Below are positions 13,869 to 63,073 of a stretch of DNA of 64,000 nucleotides, one piece after another. Location of the stretch: IMG/VR virus record IMGVR_UViG_3300004463_000226, positions 1 to 64,000 of that record; one strand, 5' to 3'. The position numbers and the translations under genes were made by a program. Under the pieces are notes generated by a model. It was not told the DNA's origin. It ran no database searches and saw nothing but the letters and a program-made list of their open reading frames with translations. Numbering within the stretch: the stretch's first letter is position 1; each line of letters opens with the position of its first letter.

Positions 13869-13887
13869 GTATGGTTTCCATACTCAT
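13865..13887. terminator. Bidirectional terminator between convergent genes
   Basis: ATGAGTATGG-TTT-CCATACTCAT flanked by A-rich and T-rich runs. Confidence 0.7.
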
Positions 13888-16028
13888 CCTTTTTTGCTTC
13901 GTAAACTTATCTTTGGTATACCTCTAAATTTATAGTTTCTTATAGCTTCATTCATGAAATGCTCATGTACATTGAAGTCGTTTCTTTTCTGTAGTATCTC
14001 ATAGTTACCTTTCAAATTCATCACATATGTATTTACTGAATCATTGAAATAGTTCTTTAAGATATCGAAAAGTTTATTAACAACTTCACTATCTGCAACA
14101 GGAACCATAATCTCAACCCGTCTATCTAAGTTTCTAGTCAGTAAGTCTGCACTAGAAATATAAATATTCGGATCTCCATTATTGTAGAAATAATATATCC
14201 TACTATGCTCTAAATATCTACCTATTATACTTCTTATTCTTATATTTTTATTAATAGGTTTCATAGAGCAAATTCCTCTGACAATAATATTAATCTGAAC
14301 ACCTCTTTCAGATGCTATATATAACTTCCGTATAATTCCCATATCTGATAAGGAATTGAGCTTTAATGTAATTGCTCCTTTCTTTCCTTTCTCAACATTA
14401 TTAATCTCTCGATCAATTAAATCATACAGTTTAGTACGAATGTTATAAGGAGAATAACAAACCTTAGATATTTCATCTCTAGGATCAGAGTAACCTGATA
14501 AGATATTAAAGATTGTAATAATATCTTCTCCAATTTTATTATTGGATGTAAAGAATGATAAGTCTGTATAAATACGTGCAGTCTTATCATTGTAGTTACC
14601 TGTTCCTACATGACAATATATTTTGAGTCCTGATTTCTTCTTAGATCTTCGTACAACAGCAATGAATTTACAGTGGGTTTTTAGCTCCTCTAATCCATAA
14701 ATTATTTTACATCCTGCTAGACGAAGTTTCTCAACTAGAGATATATTTCTATCTTCATCGAATCTAGCTTTAATCTCTAATAGAACATTTACCTGTTTTC
14801 CTTTTCTTGCTGCATTACATAAAGCCTCAACAATTGGAGAATCAGATGATGATACACGATATAGTGTCTGCTTGATAGCTAATACATCTTTATCTTGTGC
14901 AGCATGTTCTAGAAACTTTACTACAGGTTCAAATGATTCATATGGATGATGTAACAGAATATCGTTGTTATCAATAGCTGTAAACATATCATGCTCACCC
15001 ATAAGTTCTTCTGGATACTGTGGTTCAAATGATTCATATTCATATAAACCACTACGAATTGGCATACCTGATAAGAAAGATAAATCGACAATTGTACTTA
15101 CCTTATAAACATTTTTCTTATTCATGTCAAACATCTTTACTAACAACTTCAATAGTTGCTTTGGAATATCTGCACTAATATCCATGAAGATAGGATTACT
15201 ATTTTCACGTCGTTTTAAAGTCTGTCTCATACGGTCAATGATATATACATCCTTATTTGGATCTAATTCTATATCAGCTTCACGTACGATTCTCATACAA
15301 CCTCGATATATTATTTCTTTATTAATAAACACTCTATGGAGATTATTGAATATTATCTCCTCCAACAGAATATACTTTCTCTCCTCACTATCTTCTGATT
15401 CAATCTCATAAATTCTGTCTATACCTATATCTATAGGTATAATAGACACAACATTGTGATTTGGATTTCTCTTATCTTCTATACCAGCAATTATACTTAA
15501 CTGCTTAGAATGAATTAAGGGAAAATCCTTTGTAGTATCAAAAGTGATTGGAGTTATTAATGGATAAATTTGTCTAGTGAATAGCTTATCAACCTGAGAT
15601 TGTTCCTTCACTGTTAAGTCATGATACTTACATATAGAGATATTATTTTTCTCTAGTTTCTTTCGTATCTTGACATAACATTCTTCTTGGAGATATTTGA
15701 ATTTAACTATCTCCTTGAATAGTGCAGTATACTCATCCTCAGGTGTTAGACCAGAAATATCCATTACATAGCTTTCGTCGTATAACTTCTTTAACACAGA
15801 TGCAAATCGAACCATAATGAATTCATCAAGATTTGAGGCTGTAATTCCTAAGAATTTTAAACGCTCAAGTAACGGAACTTCATCTCTTATTGCTTGATGA
15901 AGAACACGTTTGTTGAATTCCATCCAACTCAATTCCCTATTGATATAGAAGTCTGGGTTGTTATAAATCGAGTTAAGCTCGTTTCGTTCTAAGTTGTATA
16001 TGTCTGCGATGTTCAATGTAGTATTCAT
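13884..16028 (-). CDS. ppk1: Polyphosphate kinase 1
   Basis: NRELSWMEFNKRVL, SNLDEF, HHPYESF, IKQTLYR, EIKARFDE, KTHCK (phospho-His), HVGTGNYN, GRYLEHSRIY and SADLLTRNLDRRVE are all present. Likely start 16028. Confidence 0.96.
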   Translation of the reverse strand: MNTTLNIADIYNLERNELNSIYNNPDFYINRELSWMEFNKRVLHQAIRDEVPLLERLKFLGITASNLDEFIMVRFASVLKKLYDESYVMDISGLTPEDEYTALFKEIVKFKYLQEECYVKIRKKLEKNNISICKYHDLTVKEQSQVDKLFTRQIYPLITPITFDTTKDFPLIHSKQLSIIAGIEDKRNPNHNVVSIIPIDIGIDRIYEIESEDSEERKYILLEEIIFNNLHRVFINKEIIYRGCMRIVREADIELDPNKDVYIIDRMRQTLKRRENSNPIFMDISADIPKQLLKLLVKMFDMNKKNVYKVSTIVDLSFLSGMPIRSGLYEYESFEPQYPEELMGEHDMFTAIDNNDILLHHPYESFEPVVKFLEHAAQDKDVLAIKQTLYRVSSSDSPIVEALCNAARKGKQVNVLLEIKARFDEDRNISLVEKLRLAGCKIIYGLEELKTHCKFIAVVRRSKKKSGLKIYCHVGTGNYNDKTARIYTDLSFFTSNNKIGEDIITIFNILSGYSDPRDEISKVCYSPYNIRTKLYDLIDREINNVEKGKKGAITLKLNSLSDMGIIRKLYIASERGVQINIIVRGICSMKPINKNIRIRSIIGRYLEHSRIYYFYNNGDPNIYISSADLLTRNLDRRVEIMVPVADSEVVNKLFDILKNYFNDSVNTYVMNLKGNYEILQKRNDFNVHEHFMNEAIRNYKFRGIPKISLRSKKG

Positions 16029-16163
16029 CTTGAACCCCCATATGAATTTATTCACTGTTATAATATATAAATAAAAAGGTCATTCCTATGTTGAATACCC
16101 CTTCTAACTAAATGTTATATGATGAATAAAAAGACATGTAATGGGAGTTGCCCATTACATGCA

Positions 16164-20542: not shown

Positions 20543-20887
20543 TTAGAAATCTTTTCTAACAAAATCTGTTAGAGAAATAATATCTCTTTTGCCAACCTCG
20601 TCTATTTTATCTTCGATAGTGACGTCATTATCATCAAAATCAAGTGCTCGAATATCCTTGGCAGTAATCTCGCCATCAGTATAATCGTCAATGAGCTGAA
20701 GGATTCTCTGTAATTGTAATTCAGCTTCATCCATATCATCACAATTATTCATGATATTAACAATGCTATCACGAATGATTGCTAGGAAAGCATGGCTTCC
20801 TTTTATATGTGTTTTCTCTGCTTCCTTGAGCCCTCGAAGGTATTCCTTTCTCATATCGGCTCTAATTGCTGATTCACTCTTTGCCAT
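20543..20887 (-). CDS. Hypothetical protein co-transcribed with RNAP beta'-N
   Basis: GGAGG RBS before MAKSES (20887); the longer ORF-track start at 20956 has no RBS. Confidence 0.6.
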   Translation of the reverse strand: MAKSESAIRADMRKEYLRGLKEAEKTHIKGSHAFLAIIRDSIVNIMNNCDDMDEAELQLQRILQLIDDYTDGEITAKDIRALDFDDNDVTIEDKIDEVGKRDIISLTDFVRKDF

Positions 20888-20976
20888 AATACAACCTCCA
20901 TTAAATTTTTTTGTATTTCTTCCTATATATAGGTTGGTGAACAAATACTTTTTCATTAATATTCATCCACGTAAAT

Positions 20977-20986: not shown

Positions 20987-21043
20987 CTTCAAAAAAATAT
21001 AAAAAAAATAGAACCCGCTAAGGTTCTATTTTCTTCTTAATGA

Positions 21044-22291
21044 TTATTGTAACTTGTTAAGATTTCCGTTACGATCCATTCTGAACTTAAGATTTCTAAT
21101 GTCGTTTGCTATCTCAACAGATGCAGATTGTTCATTCATCATTTCTTGAACTTTATTCATGATCTGCATAACTTCACTATAACGTTTTTCTAATGCTTCA
21201 TAATCTTCCTCTAAATCTCTAAGACGAGTATTCAAACGTTTGTTTTGACCTCTAAGAGACTCATTCTCTTTACGAAGATCAGTACGCTCTGAAATCATGT
21301 TAGAGATATTATCAAGGAAGTTATTTAAGTTATCAGTTTCCTGAGCCTCAATAGATTTCTTAGGAACATCTTCCATTGAATCTAATGAGTTGCCGACAAC
21401 TACTTCAACCTTAGGTAGTTTATCTCCGTCAGTATCAACACCAATTTTCTCTAATGCCGTTTTACGTCCATTATCTTTTACAAGATTTAAGAAAGGATCT
21501 TCATTATCATCTATTTTAGGAATTGGAGAAGGTCTTTCAAAGATTTTAGGCATTTCATCTCCTTTATAATTAGGTTTCACTTCAGGTCTCATTAAATCTA
21601 ACAAGCTTTCAGCAGGTTCAAATGGTATAGATGACTTAATAATATATCTTTTATCATCAGAAACATCTTCACCAAAATCTGAAACTTCTTCTGCTGCAAT
21701 TACTGATAATTCTGTTACAGGTGTTTCTTCAGTCACAGTTTTATTCTTAATACCAAATACCTTTTCAACATCAACAGGAATACCTTCGTTCTCAACTTCT
21801 TCAATAGCCTGTTGGATATGTTGTGGTTTAATAATCGCTGCTTTATCCTCAACTTTAACTACATTATCTTTGTTGAAAGAAGCACGGATCGCACGAACTT
21901 GTTCATACTCTTCGGTGTATCTTTCTTTTACAGCAGAAGTCCAACGAGCACCAATAGCTCCGATAGATCTATTAGGAAATAACTGACTCATTAAGATATA
22001 GGCATCAGTAAGATTTTGTCCCTTGGATAAAGAGTCTTTAACACATTCCCATAACATTTCATCCTCTTCATTCGTCCAACCTAAACGCTTAGGTTCACGA
22101 ATTTCAGGATGGTTAGGTTTAATAACATTTGTCCAACGATAAGCAATTGCTCCTTCGGTTCTTCCTGCCATAGTCTTAGCAAGTTCACGGTAGCAATCTG
22201 AGAAAGGTTTATCTGCTTTTGCATAAAGCTCAATTGCATCCAAAATCATTTTGTCCTCTTTAGGTGTCCAACTCTTGCCATGTTTACTCAT
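21044..22291 (-). CDS. RsfA/YlbO-family (Myb/SANT-like) transcription regulator with a duplicated DNA-binding domain
   Basis: Two WT..ED...R(T/S).GAI..RW repeats, a C-terminal coiled coil, and the RsfA-family terminal motif FRMDRNGNL. Confidence 0.8.
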   Translation of the reverse strand: MSKHGKSWTPKEDKMILDAIELYAKADKPFSDCYRELAKTMAGRTEGAIAYRWTNVIKPNHPEIREPKRLGWTNEEDEMLWECVKDSLSKGQNLTDAYILMSQLFPNRSIGAIGARWTSAVKERYTEEYEQVRAIRASFNKDNVVKVEDKAAIIKPQHIQQAIEEVENEGIPVDVEKVFGIKNKTVTEETPVTELSVIAAEEVSDFGEDVSDDKRYIIKSSIPFEPAESLLDLMRPEVKPNYKGDEMPKIFERPSPIPKIDDNEDPFLNLVKDNGRKTALEKIGVDTDGDKLPKVEVVVGNSLDSMEDVPKKSIEAQETDNLNNFLDNISNMISERTDLRKENESLRGQNKRLNTRLRDLEEDYEALEKRYSEVMQIMNKVQEMMNEQSASVEIANDIRNLKFRMDRNGNLNKLQ

Positions 22292-22353
22292 GAATAATAT
22301 CTCCTTTACGTATACAATTATTATTGATTTTTGAATATATCATCTATATCCAC

Positions 22354-22869
22354 TTATATAATATATAACTCTTCTTTGTGAAATTGCGATTTTCTCTTAT
22401 ATTCACAAAAGTAGTATACTATACCAACTTTCTTACATTCCTTACCTTTTTGTCTAGATTGCAATTCCCACTCATCCCACTTGATATCAGGGAAGAATGT
22501 ATCACCTATAAATGATTCATATATCTTTGTGATATACATCTTCTCGACATATGGTAAGAATAGTTTATATATTTCTTCTCCTCCAAAGATATATACTCTT
22601 TCATCTTTAGTAGCTTCAAGTACTTCTTCAACAGAATGAAATATTTCACAATTTTTAGCGGTATAATCTATGTTCCGAGTAAGAATAATATTACGTCTAT
22701 TGGGAAGTGCTTTCCCAATAGACTCAAAGTTTCTTCTACCCATAACAATAGTACCACCGCTTGTTGTAACCTTCACATGTTGCAGATCTTCTGGAAGATC
22801 CCACGGAAGATTATTTTTATAACCAATTACTTGATTATGATCAAATGCAACAATTAGTGATAATGGCAT
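22354..22869 (-). CDS. dfrA: Dihydrofolate reductase
   Basis: LIVA...IG..N.LPW.LPEDL, MGRRNFESIGKALPNRRNIILT, IFGG..IY, GDTFFP. Confidence 0.97.
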   Translation of the reverse strand: MPLSLIVAFDHNQVIGYKNNLPWDLPEDLQHVKVTTSGGTIVMGRRNFESIGKALPNRRNIILTRNIDYTAKNCEIFHSVEEVLEATKDERVYIFGGEEIYKLFLPYVEKMYITKIYESFIGDTFFPDIKWDEWELQSRQKGKECKKVGIVYYFCEYKRKSQFHKEELYII

Positions 22870-61968: not shown

Positions 61969-62125
61969 AATTAATTCCCCCTAGGTTTATTATTGATTTT
62001 GAATATATTATTTATATTCACTATTATAATATATAGGTGATATTGCCGACTTTACGAATTAACATTTATTACCAGTAAAACAGTTATGTAAGAAATACAT
62101 ATCAATGAGAGGGGAACATACTAAA

Positions 62126-63073
62126 ATGGGTCAATTTGATAAAGAATGGAATAGGGTATTAGAGAATATTATGTTAAATGGAGTATGGCAGAAAGAAGAA
62201 CATGTCCGTGCTAAATGGGACGATGGTACTCCAGCTCCAGCTAAATTTGTTACAGGAGAAAAGATGGTATTTGATAATAGTGAAGCTCTAGTCCCAACGA
62301 CTAAAGAAATTAAACGTAAGAGTCCATTACGTGAACTAAAATGGATCTGGTTCCTTAAATCAAACGTGGTTCAGAAACTTCGTGATTTGGGAAGTAGTAT
62401 TTGGGATAAATGGGAAATTAAAGAAGGTGAATGGACAGGTACAATTGGTCCAGCTTACGGACATCAATTAGGTAAACAATGTAGGAAATTTCCAGTAGAA
62501 AAACTTCGCTGGGAACATCTACATCCTGAGCATGCTGTTGAGTTAAGACAAATGATAGAGGATGCTTTAGCACAAGGTTTTATTATTAAATATGTAATGC
62601 TGGATCAGGTAGACTTCCTCATCCAAGGTCTTCTTACTAACCCTGGTTCTCGCCGATATATTCTATCACTATGGGGTATTGAAGATCTTGACTACATGGC
62701 ACTAGAACCATGTGTATGGAAGACAGGGTGGCAATATGTTGATGGTAAAATTGATTTAATAACTGGTGTACGTTCAAATGATATCTGTGTAGGAAATCCT
62801 TTTAATGTGTTTCAATATCAGGTGTTATGGAATCTTATCTGTCAGGTAACAGGTCACACACCAGGGAAGATTCAATTTGATCTCGATAATCCACATATTT
62901 ATGACAGACACATTCCTGAGGCTATGAAACAGTTAGTGTATCCTCAAAAAACAGCTCCAAAACTTTGGATTAATCCTGATATTAAAAACTTTTATGACTT
63001 TAATCCAGATACTGATGTTAAATTGATTGACTATGAACACGGTCCAGACCGTTACTATGAGGTGGCTGAATAA
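62126..63073 (+). CDS. thyA: Thymidylate synthase (B. subtilis ThyA / phi3T ThyP3 type)
   Basis: M.QFDK, R.KW.DGTPA, IWD.W, IG.AYG.Q, SRR, ALEPCV (catalytic Cys), RSND...GNPFNVFQY, HIYDRH. Confidence 0.96.
   Translation: MGQFDKEWNRVLENIMLNGVWQKEEHVRAKWDDGTPAPAKFVTGEKMVFDNSEALVPTTKEIKRKSPLRELKWIWFLKSNVVQKLRDLGSSIWDKWEIKEGEWTGTIGPAYGHQLGKQCRKFPVEKLRWEHLHPEHAVELRQMIEDALAQGFIIKYVMLDQVDFLIQGLLTNPGSRRYILSLWGIEDLDYMALEPCVWKTGWQYVDGKIDLITGVRSNDICVGNPFNVFQYQVLWNLICQVTGHTPGKIQFDLDNPHIYDRHIPEAMKQLVYPQKTAPKLWINPDIKNFYDFNPDTDVKLIDYEHGPDRYYEVAE

What the first reader, a model, noticed from the sequence alone, without database searches (positions are those of the whole stretch)
21044..22367. Early-expressed RsfA-family sporulation regulator with a tandem-duplicated Myb-like domain
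Seen: two Myb/SANT-like repeats (host RsfA/YlbO proteins have one), a long acidic linker, a coiled coil and the FRMDRNGNL end. It has an early motif and leader box upstream and its own terminator (21006-21031). Known: RsfA and YlbO regulate forespore/mother-cell transcription. Inference: the phage manipulates host sporulation, by blocking it or by promoting spore entrapment.
Basis: partly seen in the sequence, partly recalled or inferred. Interest (0 to 1): 0.6.

Follow-up and report, generated by a model that had tools for sequence, protein, structure and literature searches.

The report
Phage RsfA-like regulator with two Myb domains
A 234-kb uncultured jumbo phage that brings its own RNA polymerases carries, behind a predicted early promoter, a very divergent copy of a bacterial sporulation regulator (RsfA/GerR type) with an extra DNA-binding repeat; phage copies of this regulator were already known, so it is a new variant and its target is still unproven.

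Summary
Window 21044-22291 (-) is a 415-aa ORF with two Myb repeats, an acidic linker predicted to be disordered, a long helix modelled as a parallel dimer, and the C-terminal motif FRMDRNGNL. It has its own promoter-like motif, leader and terminator.

Family: residues 72-414 align end to end with bona fide RsfA proteins (hhalign 99.7%, E 3e-25). The protein scores 49 bits against the curated TIGR02894 cut-off of 126. It is a divergent homologue, not a curated member.

The extra N-terminal Myb is an old duplication (29% identity to repeat 2). It is shared by orthologues at the same locus in three related uncultured phages. Similar two- and three-Myb forms occur in phage-G-like contigs.

The upstream motif matches the experimentally defined AR9 early (virion RNA polymerase) promoter and is conserved upstream of two orthologues.

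The gene is accessory and fast-evolving. It is absent from a complete relative and from AR9, BpSp, LPJP1 and Madawaska.

Sporulation manipulation remains an inference. A rival is control of the phage's own early genes through a "leader box" that co-occurs with the gene.

Verdict: a new variant of a known kind, of moderate interest.

The parts
22351..22370 (-). Predicted early (virion-RNAP type) promoter: TTATATATTAT at 22368-22358, a 6-nt spacer, and G at 22351 as the predicted transcription start. It overlaps the last codons and stop of the upstream DHFR gene.
   Evidence: It matches 11 of 13 positions of the AR9 early consensus AAATATATATTAT-(6N)-G, with the spacer and G (PMC5312081). There are 36 TATATATTAT-N6-G sites genome-wide, nearly all 10-120 nt upstream of a gene on the same strand. 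The same motif stands upstream of the orthologues in L004 and L014.
22292..22350 (-). 5' leader of about 59 nt. It holds a weak inverted repeat (22351-22333), the leader box TCAATAATAA (22327-22318) and the Shine-Dalgarno AAAGGAG (22307-22301).
   Evidence: Early motif plus box occurs 11 times in this genome and 0 times in the relative G001; reversed-pattern controls give 0. The box is conserved upstream of the orthologues. The RNA fold is no better than shuffles, z 0.01.
21044..22291 (-). CDS of 415 aa (P0001): a divergent RsfA-like Myb transcription factor.
22112..22276 (-). Myb repeat 1 (aa 6-60), the extra N-terminal repeat.
   Evidence: Pfam PF00249 matches aa 6-56 at 34.7 bits, over the cut-off. 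AF2 helices 10-25, 30-40 and 46-60 have pLDDT above 90. It aligns with R1 of P0004, P0005 and P0108.
21920..22084 (-). Myb repeat 2 (aa 70-124), the counterpart of the single Myb of RsfA/GerR. The conserved post-Myb helix follows (aa 126-153, nt 21833-21916).
   Evidence: TIGR02894 positions 6-90 match aa 71-155. hhalign starts at aa 72, which aligns with RsfA residue 9. AF2.
21362..21832 (-). Acidic linker (aa 154-310), low-complexity and predicted disordered. It is about 110 residues longer than in the orthologues.
   Evidence: Net charge -16 and pI 4.5 over aa 136-310. pLDDT is below 50 for aa 184-308. The alignment shows the length difference.
21095..21361 (-). Long helix / coiled coil (aa 311-399), the predicted dimerisation module.
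   Evidence: AF2 helix 311-399. TIGR02894 positions 92-158 match aa 322-388. The homodimer model scores 0.61 against a best control of 0.00, with in-register parallel contacts at 329-381.
21059..21085 (-). C-terminal signature FRMDRNGNL (aa 403-411), a small beta-hairpin in the model.
   Evidence: The motif is found in 4 of 4 proteins above the RsfA cut-off and in the phage forms. G409 and L411 are invariant; M405, N408 and N410 are nearly so.
21001..21036 (-). Intrinsic terminator: a stem-loop with a GC core followed by a T-run. The next gene's own early motif follows at about 20985.

Best explanation
**What it is.** The gene encodes a phage-borne, very divergent homologue of the Bacillota sporulation regulators RsfA/GerR.

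**Architecture.** Residues 72-415 correspond to a complete RsfA-type protein: a Myb helix-turn-helix, a post-Myb helix, a variable linker, a coiled coil and the FRMDRNGNL end. A second RsfA-type Myb repeat has been added at the N-terminus. The linker has expanded into an acidic segment of about 155 aa that is predicted to be disordered.

**Predicted molecular behaviour.** The coiled coil pairs two chains in parallel. The working molecule would then carry four Myb repeats and read a longer or composite DNA site.

**Expression.** The gene is a stand-alone unit with its own promoter, leader and terminator. The promoter is of the class that the injected virion RNA polymerase reads in AR9, so the protein should appear within minutes of infection without host transcription.

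**Most likely role (inferred, not shown).** It is an auxiliary, host-directed DNA-binding regulator. I think it occupies sites, or competes or pairs with the host's RsfA/GerR-type factors, and so biases stationary-phase or sporulation gene expression of a spore-forming host.

**What is shown and what is inferred.**
- Shown: the architecture, the homology, the motif class, the synteny and the accessory status.
- Inferred: the timing of expression, dimerisation, DNA binding, the host and the target genes.
For: **Homology.**
- TIGR02894 gives E 5.7e-13 in two pieces, Myb and coil.
- hhalign of the phage clade against bona fide RsfA proteins gives 99.7%, E 3e-25. It aligns aa 72-414 with RsfA residues 9-264.
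- The FRMDRNGNL signature is shared.

**Structure and dimer.** Two confident Myb folds plus one long helix. Dimer model 0.61 against 0.00.

**Early promoter class.**
- Consensus from PMC5312081, with the genome-wide distribution.
- The motif is conserved before the orthologues although the proteins are only 26-40% identical.
- Other genes behind the motif encode DNA ligase, RNAP beta, gyrase A, PPK and a ThyA-like enzyme. No gene with a recognisable structural-protein domain was among those scanned.
- The gene lies two genes upstream of the non-virion RNAP beta' N-terminal subunit gene.

**Accessory, so not core phage regulation.**
- Absent from the complete relative G001, with a positive control on G000.
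- Absent from AR9, BpSp, LPJP1 and Madawaska.
- It is the fastest-diverging gene of its neighbourhood: 26-32% identity against 86% for RNAP beta'.

**Link to spore-formers.** In 50,697 phage records, RsfA-like genes are found almost only in Bacillus phages. Published readings of such genes as sporulation modulators: PMC12484599. GerR and RsfA regulate sigma-E and sigma-F genes: PMC517825.
Against: - The protein is below the curated family cut-off (49 against 126 bits).
- The extra Myb and the altered recognition helices may give a DNA specificity unrelated to host RsfA.
- The host is unknown, and a PPK-based host search was uninformative.
- No other sporulation-type gene was found: no sigma factor and no SinI.
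- Phages of this type transcribe independently of host RNAP, so a transcription factor might serve the phage polymerases instead (idea raised in PMC7824862).
- The leader box co-occurs with the gene.
- No expression data could be obtained.
Confidence: 0.45

Rival explanations
1. The protein is a regulator of the phage's own programme. It binds phage DNA, possibly the TCAATAATAA leader box just downstream of a subset of early promoters including its own. It would tune or shut off an early sub-regulon, working with the phage-encoded polymerases rather than with the host's.
For: - The early-motif-plus-box composite occurs 11 times in this genome and 0 times in the relative G001. G001 has as many early motifs (46 against 43) but lacks the gene.
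- The box is conserved upstream of the orthologous genes in L004 and L014.
- The box often forms an imperfect CAAT-N4-ATTG inverted repeat.
- The phage has its own RNAPs and no sigma factor.
- Jumbo-phage transcription factors have been proposed to work with phage RNAPs (PMC7824862).
Against: - The co-occurrence rests on very few genomes and is confounded by relatedness.
- The box is always on the coding strand, 10-35 nt before the ribosome site. That fits an RNA-level leader element or a copied promoter-leader cassette as well as it fits an operator.
- The gene is dispensable in close kin, which run a similar number of early promoter motifs without it.
- There is no evidence of binding.
Confidence: 0.27
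2. The protein is a dominant-negative or decoy. Its conserved coiled coil and FRMDRNGNL end pair with the host's RsfA/GerR-type proteins, or with their partner. This would inactivate them or retarget them through the extra Myb repeat and acidic linker. It would not act mainly through its own DNA sites.
For: - The coil and C-terminal motif are the best-conserved parts between phage and host proteins.
- The coil is predicted to dimerise in register.
- Long acidic disordered segments are common in decoys and in interaction hubs (own knowledge).
Against: - Both Myb repeats keep the invariant R-W of the recognition helix, and they fold confidently. That argues for retained DNA binding.
Confidence: 0.15
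3. The gene is a drifting passenger: an acquired host-like gene under relaxed constraint, with no important role in infection.
For: - It diverges very fast.
- The linker length varies greatly, with protein lengths from 226 to 415 aa.
- It has been lost in relatives.
Against: - The 415-codon frame stays open in a 34% GC genome.
- The locus, the promoter and the leader are conserved in at least three other phages.
- Key residues in both Myb repeats and the C-terminal motif are invariant.
Confidence: 0.08

Closest known systems
RsfA / GerR (YlbO) of Bacillus subtilis (NCBIfam TIGR02894, NF010534, NF010535)
   Same: - One RsfA-type Myb repeat with long W-to-W spacing (44-45 residues).
- The post-Myb helix, a variable linker and a coiled coil.
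- The terminal F(K/R)MD(K/R)NGNL motif.
- The alignment runs end to end.
   Different: - An extra N-terminal Myb repeat.
- A linker of about 155 aa that is acidic and predicted disordered.
- A score far below the curated cut-off.
- It is encoded by a phage and sits behind a phage early promoter, not a sigma-F or sigma-E promoter.
- Its function is untested.
RsfA-like Myb regulators of Bacillus phage G and of Basilisk-like phages (PMC7824862, PMC12484599, PMC6145125)
   Same: - They are phage-encoded homologues of the same host family.
- Phage G also has ORFs with two or three Myb repeats, and phage-G-like contigs carry the two- or three-Myb plus coil plus FKMDRNGNL form.
   Different: - Those phages have no multisubunit RNAP of their own.
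- Sequence similarity to P0001 is too low for tblastn. The only hit is phage G gp379 at E 8e-3.
- The gene neighbourhood differs: AAA_3 - Myb - SIR2 there, DHFR - Myb - nvRNAP beta' here.
- I did not find this kind of gene reported for AR9-type phages. AR9, BpSp, LPJP1 and Madawaska lack it.
Eukaryotic R2R3-type Myb DNA-binding domains (c-Myb, B-Myb, Trichomonas Myb2/3)
   Same: Two adjacent three-helix Myb repeats joined by a short linker. They are the best PDB sequence and fold matches.
   Different: - Both phage repeats carry the RsfA-type insertion. The alignment to c-Myb needs a 6-7 residue gap in each repeat.
- The repeats resemble each other and RsfA. An internal duplication is therefore more likely than capture of a eukaryotic module.
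- Foldseek E-values are only about 2e-3.
AR9 early (virion RNA polymerase) promoters
   Same: The core TATATATTAT, a 6-nt spacer and G as the start (PMC5312081). The number of sites per genome is similar: 36-46 here and in G001, 41 in AR9.
   Different: - The match is to sequence only, and no transcript mapping exists.
- The phage is only about 31-34% identical to AR9-type phages in RNAP beta'.
- It carries DHFR and a thymidylate-synthase-like gene.

Membership tests
RsfA family transcriptional regulator (TIGR02894) | Whole-protein score at or above the curated cut-off (126.45 bits) | tested here: not met
   49.3 bits, E 5.7e-13. Bona fide members score 172-200 bits, and other two-Myb forms score 31-89 bits.
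RsfA family transcriptional regulator (TIGR02894) | N-terminal Myb-like helix-turn-helix of the RsfA type, followed by the conserved basic or acidic helix | tested here: met
   Model positions 6-90 match aa 71-155. hhalign aligns from aa 72. R116 and W117 are invariant.
RsfA family transcriptional regulator (TIGR02894) | C-terminal coiled coil ending in F(K/R)MD(K/R)NGNL | tested here: met
   Model positions 92-158 match aa 322-388. FRMDRNGNL lies at aa 403-411. hhalign runs to residue 414.
RsfA family transcriptional regulator (TIGR02894) | Single Myb repeat architecture | tested here: not met
   There are two repeats. The four proteins above the cut-off each have one.
RsfA family transcriptional regulator (TIGR02894) | Compartment-specific expression from sigma-F or sigma-E promoters, and control of sporulation genes | not testable with these tools
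   The gene sits behind a phage early-type motif. No sigma-70-type promoter stands out upstream. The function needs experiments.
R2R3-type Myb DNA-binding domain | Two adjacent Myb repeats | tested here: met
   aa 7-123 align with c-Myb R2R3, E 4e-5. The top fold matches are tandem-Myb proteins.
R2R3-type Myb DNA-binding domain | Canonical repeat length with three regularly spaced tryptophans (18-19 residues apart) | tested here: not met
   The W-to-W span is 45 residues in both repeats, there is no central Trp, and each repeat needs a 6-7 residue gap against c-Myb.
AR9-type early (virion RNAP) promoter | Consensus AAATATATATTAT-(6N)-G upstream of the gene | tested here: met
   11 of 13 positions match, with the exact spacer and G at 22351. 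The motif is conserved in L004 and L014.
AR9-type early (virion RNAP) promoter | A transcript 5' end at the G within minutes of infection, independent of protein synthesis | not testable with these tools
   No RNA data.

The most novel reading that the evidence does not exclude
A host developmental transcription factor has been domesticated as a specific regulator of a host-RNAP-independent phage programme. In this reading, the two-Myb RsfA-like dimer binds the TCAATAATAA leader box just downstream of about a dozen virion-RNAP promoters, its own included. It would thereby gate an early sub-regulon. This would be the first sequence-specific factor known to control multisubunit jumbo-phage polymerases.
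Probability: 0.15. Interest if true: 0.7.

Novelty: new variant of a known kind. Interest (0 to 1): 0.4.

Why it matters
Phage copies of sporulation regulators are one route by which viruses may steer dormancy in spore-forming bacteria, but none of the RsfA-like ones has been tested.

This copy is a clean test case for three reasons. It is a single, stand-alone early gene. It lies in a phage lineage that does not need host RNA polymerase. Close relatives exist both with and without it.

Either outcome would be informative:
- If it acts on the host, it shows that even polymerase-independent jumbo phages invest early in host developmental control.
- If it acts on the phage's own leader boxes, it would give the first handle on gene-specific regulation of jumbo-phage multisubunit polymerases.

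The two-Myb plus coiled-coil architecture also predicts a four-repeat DNA reader, which is unusual for bacteria.

Tried and rejected
**Searches that gave nothing.**
- Megablast and tblastn of the gene against 50,697 phage records found no match at 1e-5. At 0.05 there were only coil or Myb fragments.
- The word-index protein search found nothing for the whole protein or for aa 1-160. I therefore ran the exhaustive search.
- A viral-contig scan with the protein found nothing.
- tblastn of P0006 against phages found nothing.
- Sample accessions are not mentioned in the paper library.
- The RsfA primary paper is not held.
- The window has no tRNA genes.

**Host and expression.**
- Host inference from the phage PPK gave only a 35% match to a Verrucomicrobia MAG, which is uninformative.
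No reads were laid and no expression test was possible.

**Analyses that were inconclusive.**
- The tree of single Myb repeats is poorly resolved (4 of 23 branches supported). One clade of all R1 repeats is rejected (p-AU 0.021), mainly because P0020 duplicated independently. No order of events is claimed.
- The leader RNA hairpin is no more stable than shuffles, z 0.01. I rejected it as a structured element.
- Foldseek on the whole model gave only E of about 2e-3. The disordered half and the free orientation of the repeats inflate the rmsd.

**Readings rejected.**
- The AR9 hits to the family profile are coiled-coil matches, for example in glucosaminidase g025, and are not homologues.
- Capture of a eukaryotic R2R3 module is rejected on repeat length and on the RsfA-like signature in both repeats.
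- No sigma factor or SinI gene is present in this genome.

**Housekeeping.** Only genetic code 11 was used.
Full report
**1. What is there**

The window belongs to a 234,335-bp IMG/VR virus record with direct terminal repeats and 33.7% G+C. On the minus strand, 21044..22291 is a 415-codon ORF, kept as P0001. A Shine-Dalgarno AAAGGAG lies 9 nt before the ATG.

The neighbours on the same strand are, upstream, a DHH/DHHA1-like gene and DHFR. Downstream come a 137-aa ORF and the N-terminal half of an RNA polymerase beta' subunit. The best AR9 match of that subunit is g270, the non-virion RNAP beta' N-terminus. Identity to cultured phages is only 31-34%, the nearest being phiR1-37, BpSp, LPJP1, the Staphylococcus jumbo phages and AR9/PBS1. 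The element is therefore an uncultured, distant member of the jumbo phages that encode their own multisubunit polymerases.

**2. The protein**

*Myb repeats.* Pfam Myb_DNA-binding passes its gathering score (34.7 against 24.4 bits), and Myb_DNA-bind_6 matches twice. Against PDB sequences, aa 7-123 align as one stretch with c-Myb/B-Myb R2R3, E 4e-5. The two repeats are 29% identical to each other without gaps, E 1e-10.

*Model.* I built an AlphaFold2 model from a 30-sequence family alignment. It gives these elements:
- two three-helix bundles (aa 10-60 and 74-124) at pLDDT above 90;
- a helix at aa 126-153;
- a low-confidence stretch at aa 184-308;
- one long helix at aa 311-399;
- a small hairpin over FRMDRNGNL.

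*Linker.* aa 136-310 have net charge -16 and pI 4.5.

*Fold matches.* The top Foldseek matches are tandem-Myb proteins (c-Myb, Cef1/CDC5, Trichomonas Myb2/3, Rap1). E-values are weak, at about 2e-3.

*Dimer.* Two copies of aa 305-415 were modelled as a parallel, in-register dimer. The score was 0.61 and the best of three controls 0.00. The runs agree in at least 69% of contacts and partner pLDDT is at least 74. In the tool's calibration, 21 of 30 solved homomers and 0 of 23 monomers reached this mark. This supports dimerisation but does not show it.

**3. Is it RsfA family?**

NCBIfam TIGR02894 matches at E 5.7e-13 but only 49.3 bits, against a cut-off of 126.45. The match falls in two pieces: model positions 6-90 on aa 71-155, and positions 92-158 on aa 322-388.

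The word-index search was blank, so I ran the exhaustive search over 1.84 billion representatives. It gave 98 hits at E of 1e-3 or better and only 12 at 1e-10 or better.

Among the hits are single-Myb proteins that pass the curated cut-off: P0032, P0038, P0044 and P0059, at 172-200 bits. There is also a set with two Myb repeats (three in P0008), a coil and the same C-terminal motif: P0004, P0005, P0006, P0008, P0010, P0011, P0015, P0016 and P0020.

A profile of the phage clade against a profile of bona fide RsfA proteins gives 99.7% probability and E 3e-25. It aligns aa 72-414 with RsfA residues 9-264, which is a whole RsfA protein.

Both repeats have the long RsfA-type Trp-to-Trp span of 45 residues, against about 39 in c-Myb, so each needs a 6-7 residue gap against c-Myb. 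Repeat 1 is thus best read as an old internal duplication added in front of a complete RsfA-like protein, and not as a captured eukaryotic module. A tree of single repeats is too weak to order the events. It shows at least one independent duplication, in P0020.

**4. Relatives and context**

P0004 lies on 45-60 kb contigs with the same gene order: holin, DHHA1, DHFR, Myb. P0005 sits between DHFR and an RNAP beta' gene. P0003 is cut by the contig end. Read through as P0108, it also has both repeats, and it is followed by a small ORF and RNAP beta'.

Identity to these orthologues is only 26-40%. In the closest locus, L004, the neighbouring RNAP beta' is 86% identical, orf429 83%, DHFR 60% and DHH 56%. 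The linker accounts for most of the length range, 226 to 415 aa.

A complete 218-kb relative, G001, has RNAP beta' 69% identical but no match to the family profile. The same search hits G000 at E 2.6e-45. AR9, BpSp, LPJP1 and Madawaska have no Myb match either. The AR9 hits are coiled-coil matches in unrelated genes. The gene is therefore accessory and fast-evolving.

A second group (P0006, P0008, P0010, P0011) lies in an AAA_3 - Myb - SIR2 - DUF2201 neighbourhood. Its DUF2201 protein is 49% identical to phage G gp576. Phage G itself gives 13 profile hits, including ORFs with two or three Myb repeats.

**5. Promoter, leader and terminator**

The published AR9 early consensus, read by the injected virion polymerase, is AAATATATATTAT-(6N)-G (PMC5312081). 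Here TTATATATTAT (22368-22358), six bases and G (22351) stand 59 nt before the ATG. They overlap the stop codon of DHFR.

The genome has 44 copies of TATATATTAT, against about 7.5 expected. Of these, 36 are followed by N6-G. Almost all are intergenic and point at a gene start 10-120 nt away.

Genes behind the motif with a recognisable function encode DNA ligase, an RNAP beta subunit, gyrase A, polyphosphate kinase and a thymidylate-synthase-like enzyme. The rest are small proteins of unknown function. The motif, spacer and G are conserved upstream of the orthologues in L004 and L014, and the motif is common in L010, L011 and G001.

A terminator-like stem with a T-run at 21036-21001 closes the unit, and the next gene has its own early motif. 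"Early-expressed" is thus a well-founded prediction, not an observation.

**6. The leader box**

TCAATAATAA (22327-22318) recurs. The 9-mer is seen 41 times against about 11.5 expected. About 18 copies lie 10-35 nt before a ribosome site on the coding strand, and 11 of them are behind an early motif. The orthologues in L004 and L014 have it too.

G001 lacks the gene. It has 46 early motifs but no box in any leader, and only 9 copies genome-wide. This co-occurrence is the only hint that the protein might act on phage DNA. It rests on few, related genomes, and the strict strand bias would also fit an RNA-level element. The leader hairpin is not thermodynamically significant.

**7. Function**

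GerR is a sigma-E-dependent negative regulator, 52% similar to RsfA, and RsfA regulates sigma-F-controlled genes (PMC517825).

Phage RsfA-like genes are already described. Phage G has an expansion of them (PMC7824862). The phage G paper proposes that they repress stationary phase or spore formation (PMC12484599). Basilisk-like phages have gp22 (PMC6145125).

A bacterial RsfA finds such genes in 17 of 50,697 phage records, 16 of them from Bacillus phages.

I favour a host-directed auxiliary regulator (about 0.45) for these reasons:
- the gene is dispensable in close kin;
- it evolves fast;
- it keeps the family's C-terminal module;
- it is predicted to be made early.

Regulation of the phage's own early genes (about 0.27), a decoy or dominant-negative role (about 0.15) and a drifting passenger (about 0.08) remain open.

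From memory, and not checked here: PBS1-type phages are reported to persist in spores. That would make sporulation control relevant to this lineage.

**8. Verdict**

This is a new variant of a known kind, because the two-Myb RsfA-like form has not, as far as I could find, been reported in a polymerase-encoding jumbo phage. Interest is moderate.

Noticed in passing
window 22366(-), 62034(-); genome G000 104276(+), 106489(+), 205850(+), 207668(+): About six copies of a roughly 60-nt promoter-leader cassette. Most hold an early motif (absent at the 104276 and 207668 copies), an AT-rich inverted repeat (for example GTGAATATA...TATATTCAC), the TCAATAATAA box and a G-rich ribosome site. They look like a duplicated regulatory module placed in front of unrelated small genes.
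   Followed up: partly
window 13884-16055 (-): A full-length polyphosphate kinase 1 (four PPK domains) behind an early motif. A copy 65% identical is in the relative G001 (locus L011). The best cellular match found was only 35%, to a Verrucomicrobia MAG. It is an unusual auxiliary metabolic gene for a phage.
   Followed up: partly
window 22354-22869 (-) and 62105-63073 (+): DHFR and a thymidylate-synthase-family gene, the latter with an upstream near-match to the early motif that lacks the G start. This suggests thymine or a modified pyrimidine in the DNA, rather than the uracil DNA of AR9/PBS1.
   Followed up: no
L004/L005 3519-3641 (+): The closest related phage contig encodes a 40-aa SinI-domain protein. 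SinI is the antagonist of the Bacillus biofilm and sporulation regulator SinR. This is a second candidate for control of host development. No SinI match was found in this genome.
   Followed up: partly
L004 11296-13389; L014 2207-4279: A 690-697 aa ORF with no Pfam hit, preceded by a long non-coding stretch. It is inserted between the Myb gene and the orf137 homologue in two relatives and is absent at this position in the window.
   Followed up: no
L006 10001-11029 (P0008); phage G NC_023719 57025-57432, 292518-293252, 397786-398283: RsfA-like proteins with three Myb repeats, and phage G ORFs with two or three Myb repeats. The repeat number in this family is plastic in jumbo phages. The conserved neighbourhood in the phage-G-like group is AAA_3 (MoxR-like) - Myb - SIR2 - DUF2201.
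   Followed up: partly
window 20543-20956 (-): The 137-aa ORF between the Myb gene and the RNAP beta' gene has its own early motif (20985) and no family match. It is conserved in position, at 36% identity, in the relatives. Like the Myb gene, it evolves fast.
   Followed up: no
MT362618.1 (Microcystis phage MaeS) 52999-53271: A bacterial RsfA Myb domain finds a 35% identical stretch in a cyanophage record, the only non-Bacillus phage hit. It may be an unrelated Myb or SANT protein.
   Followed up: no
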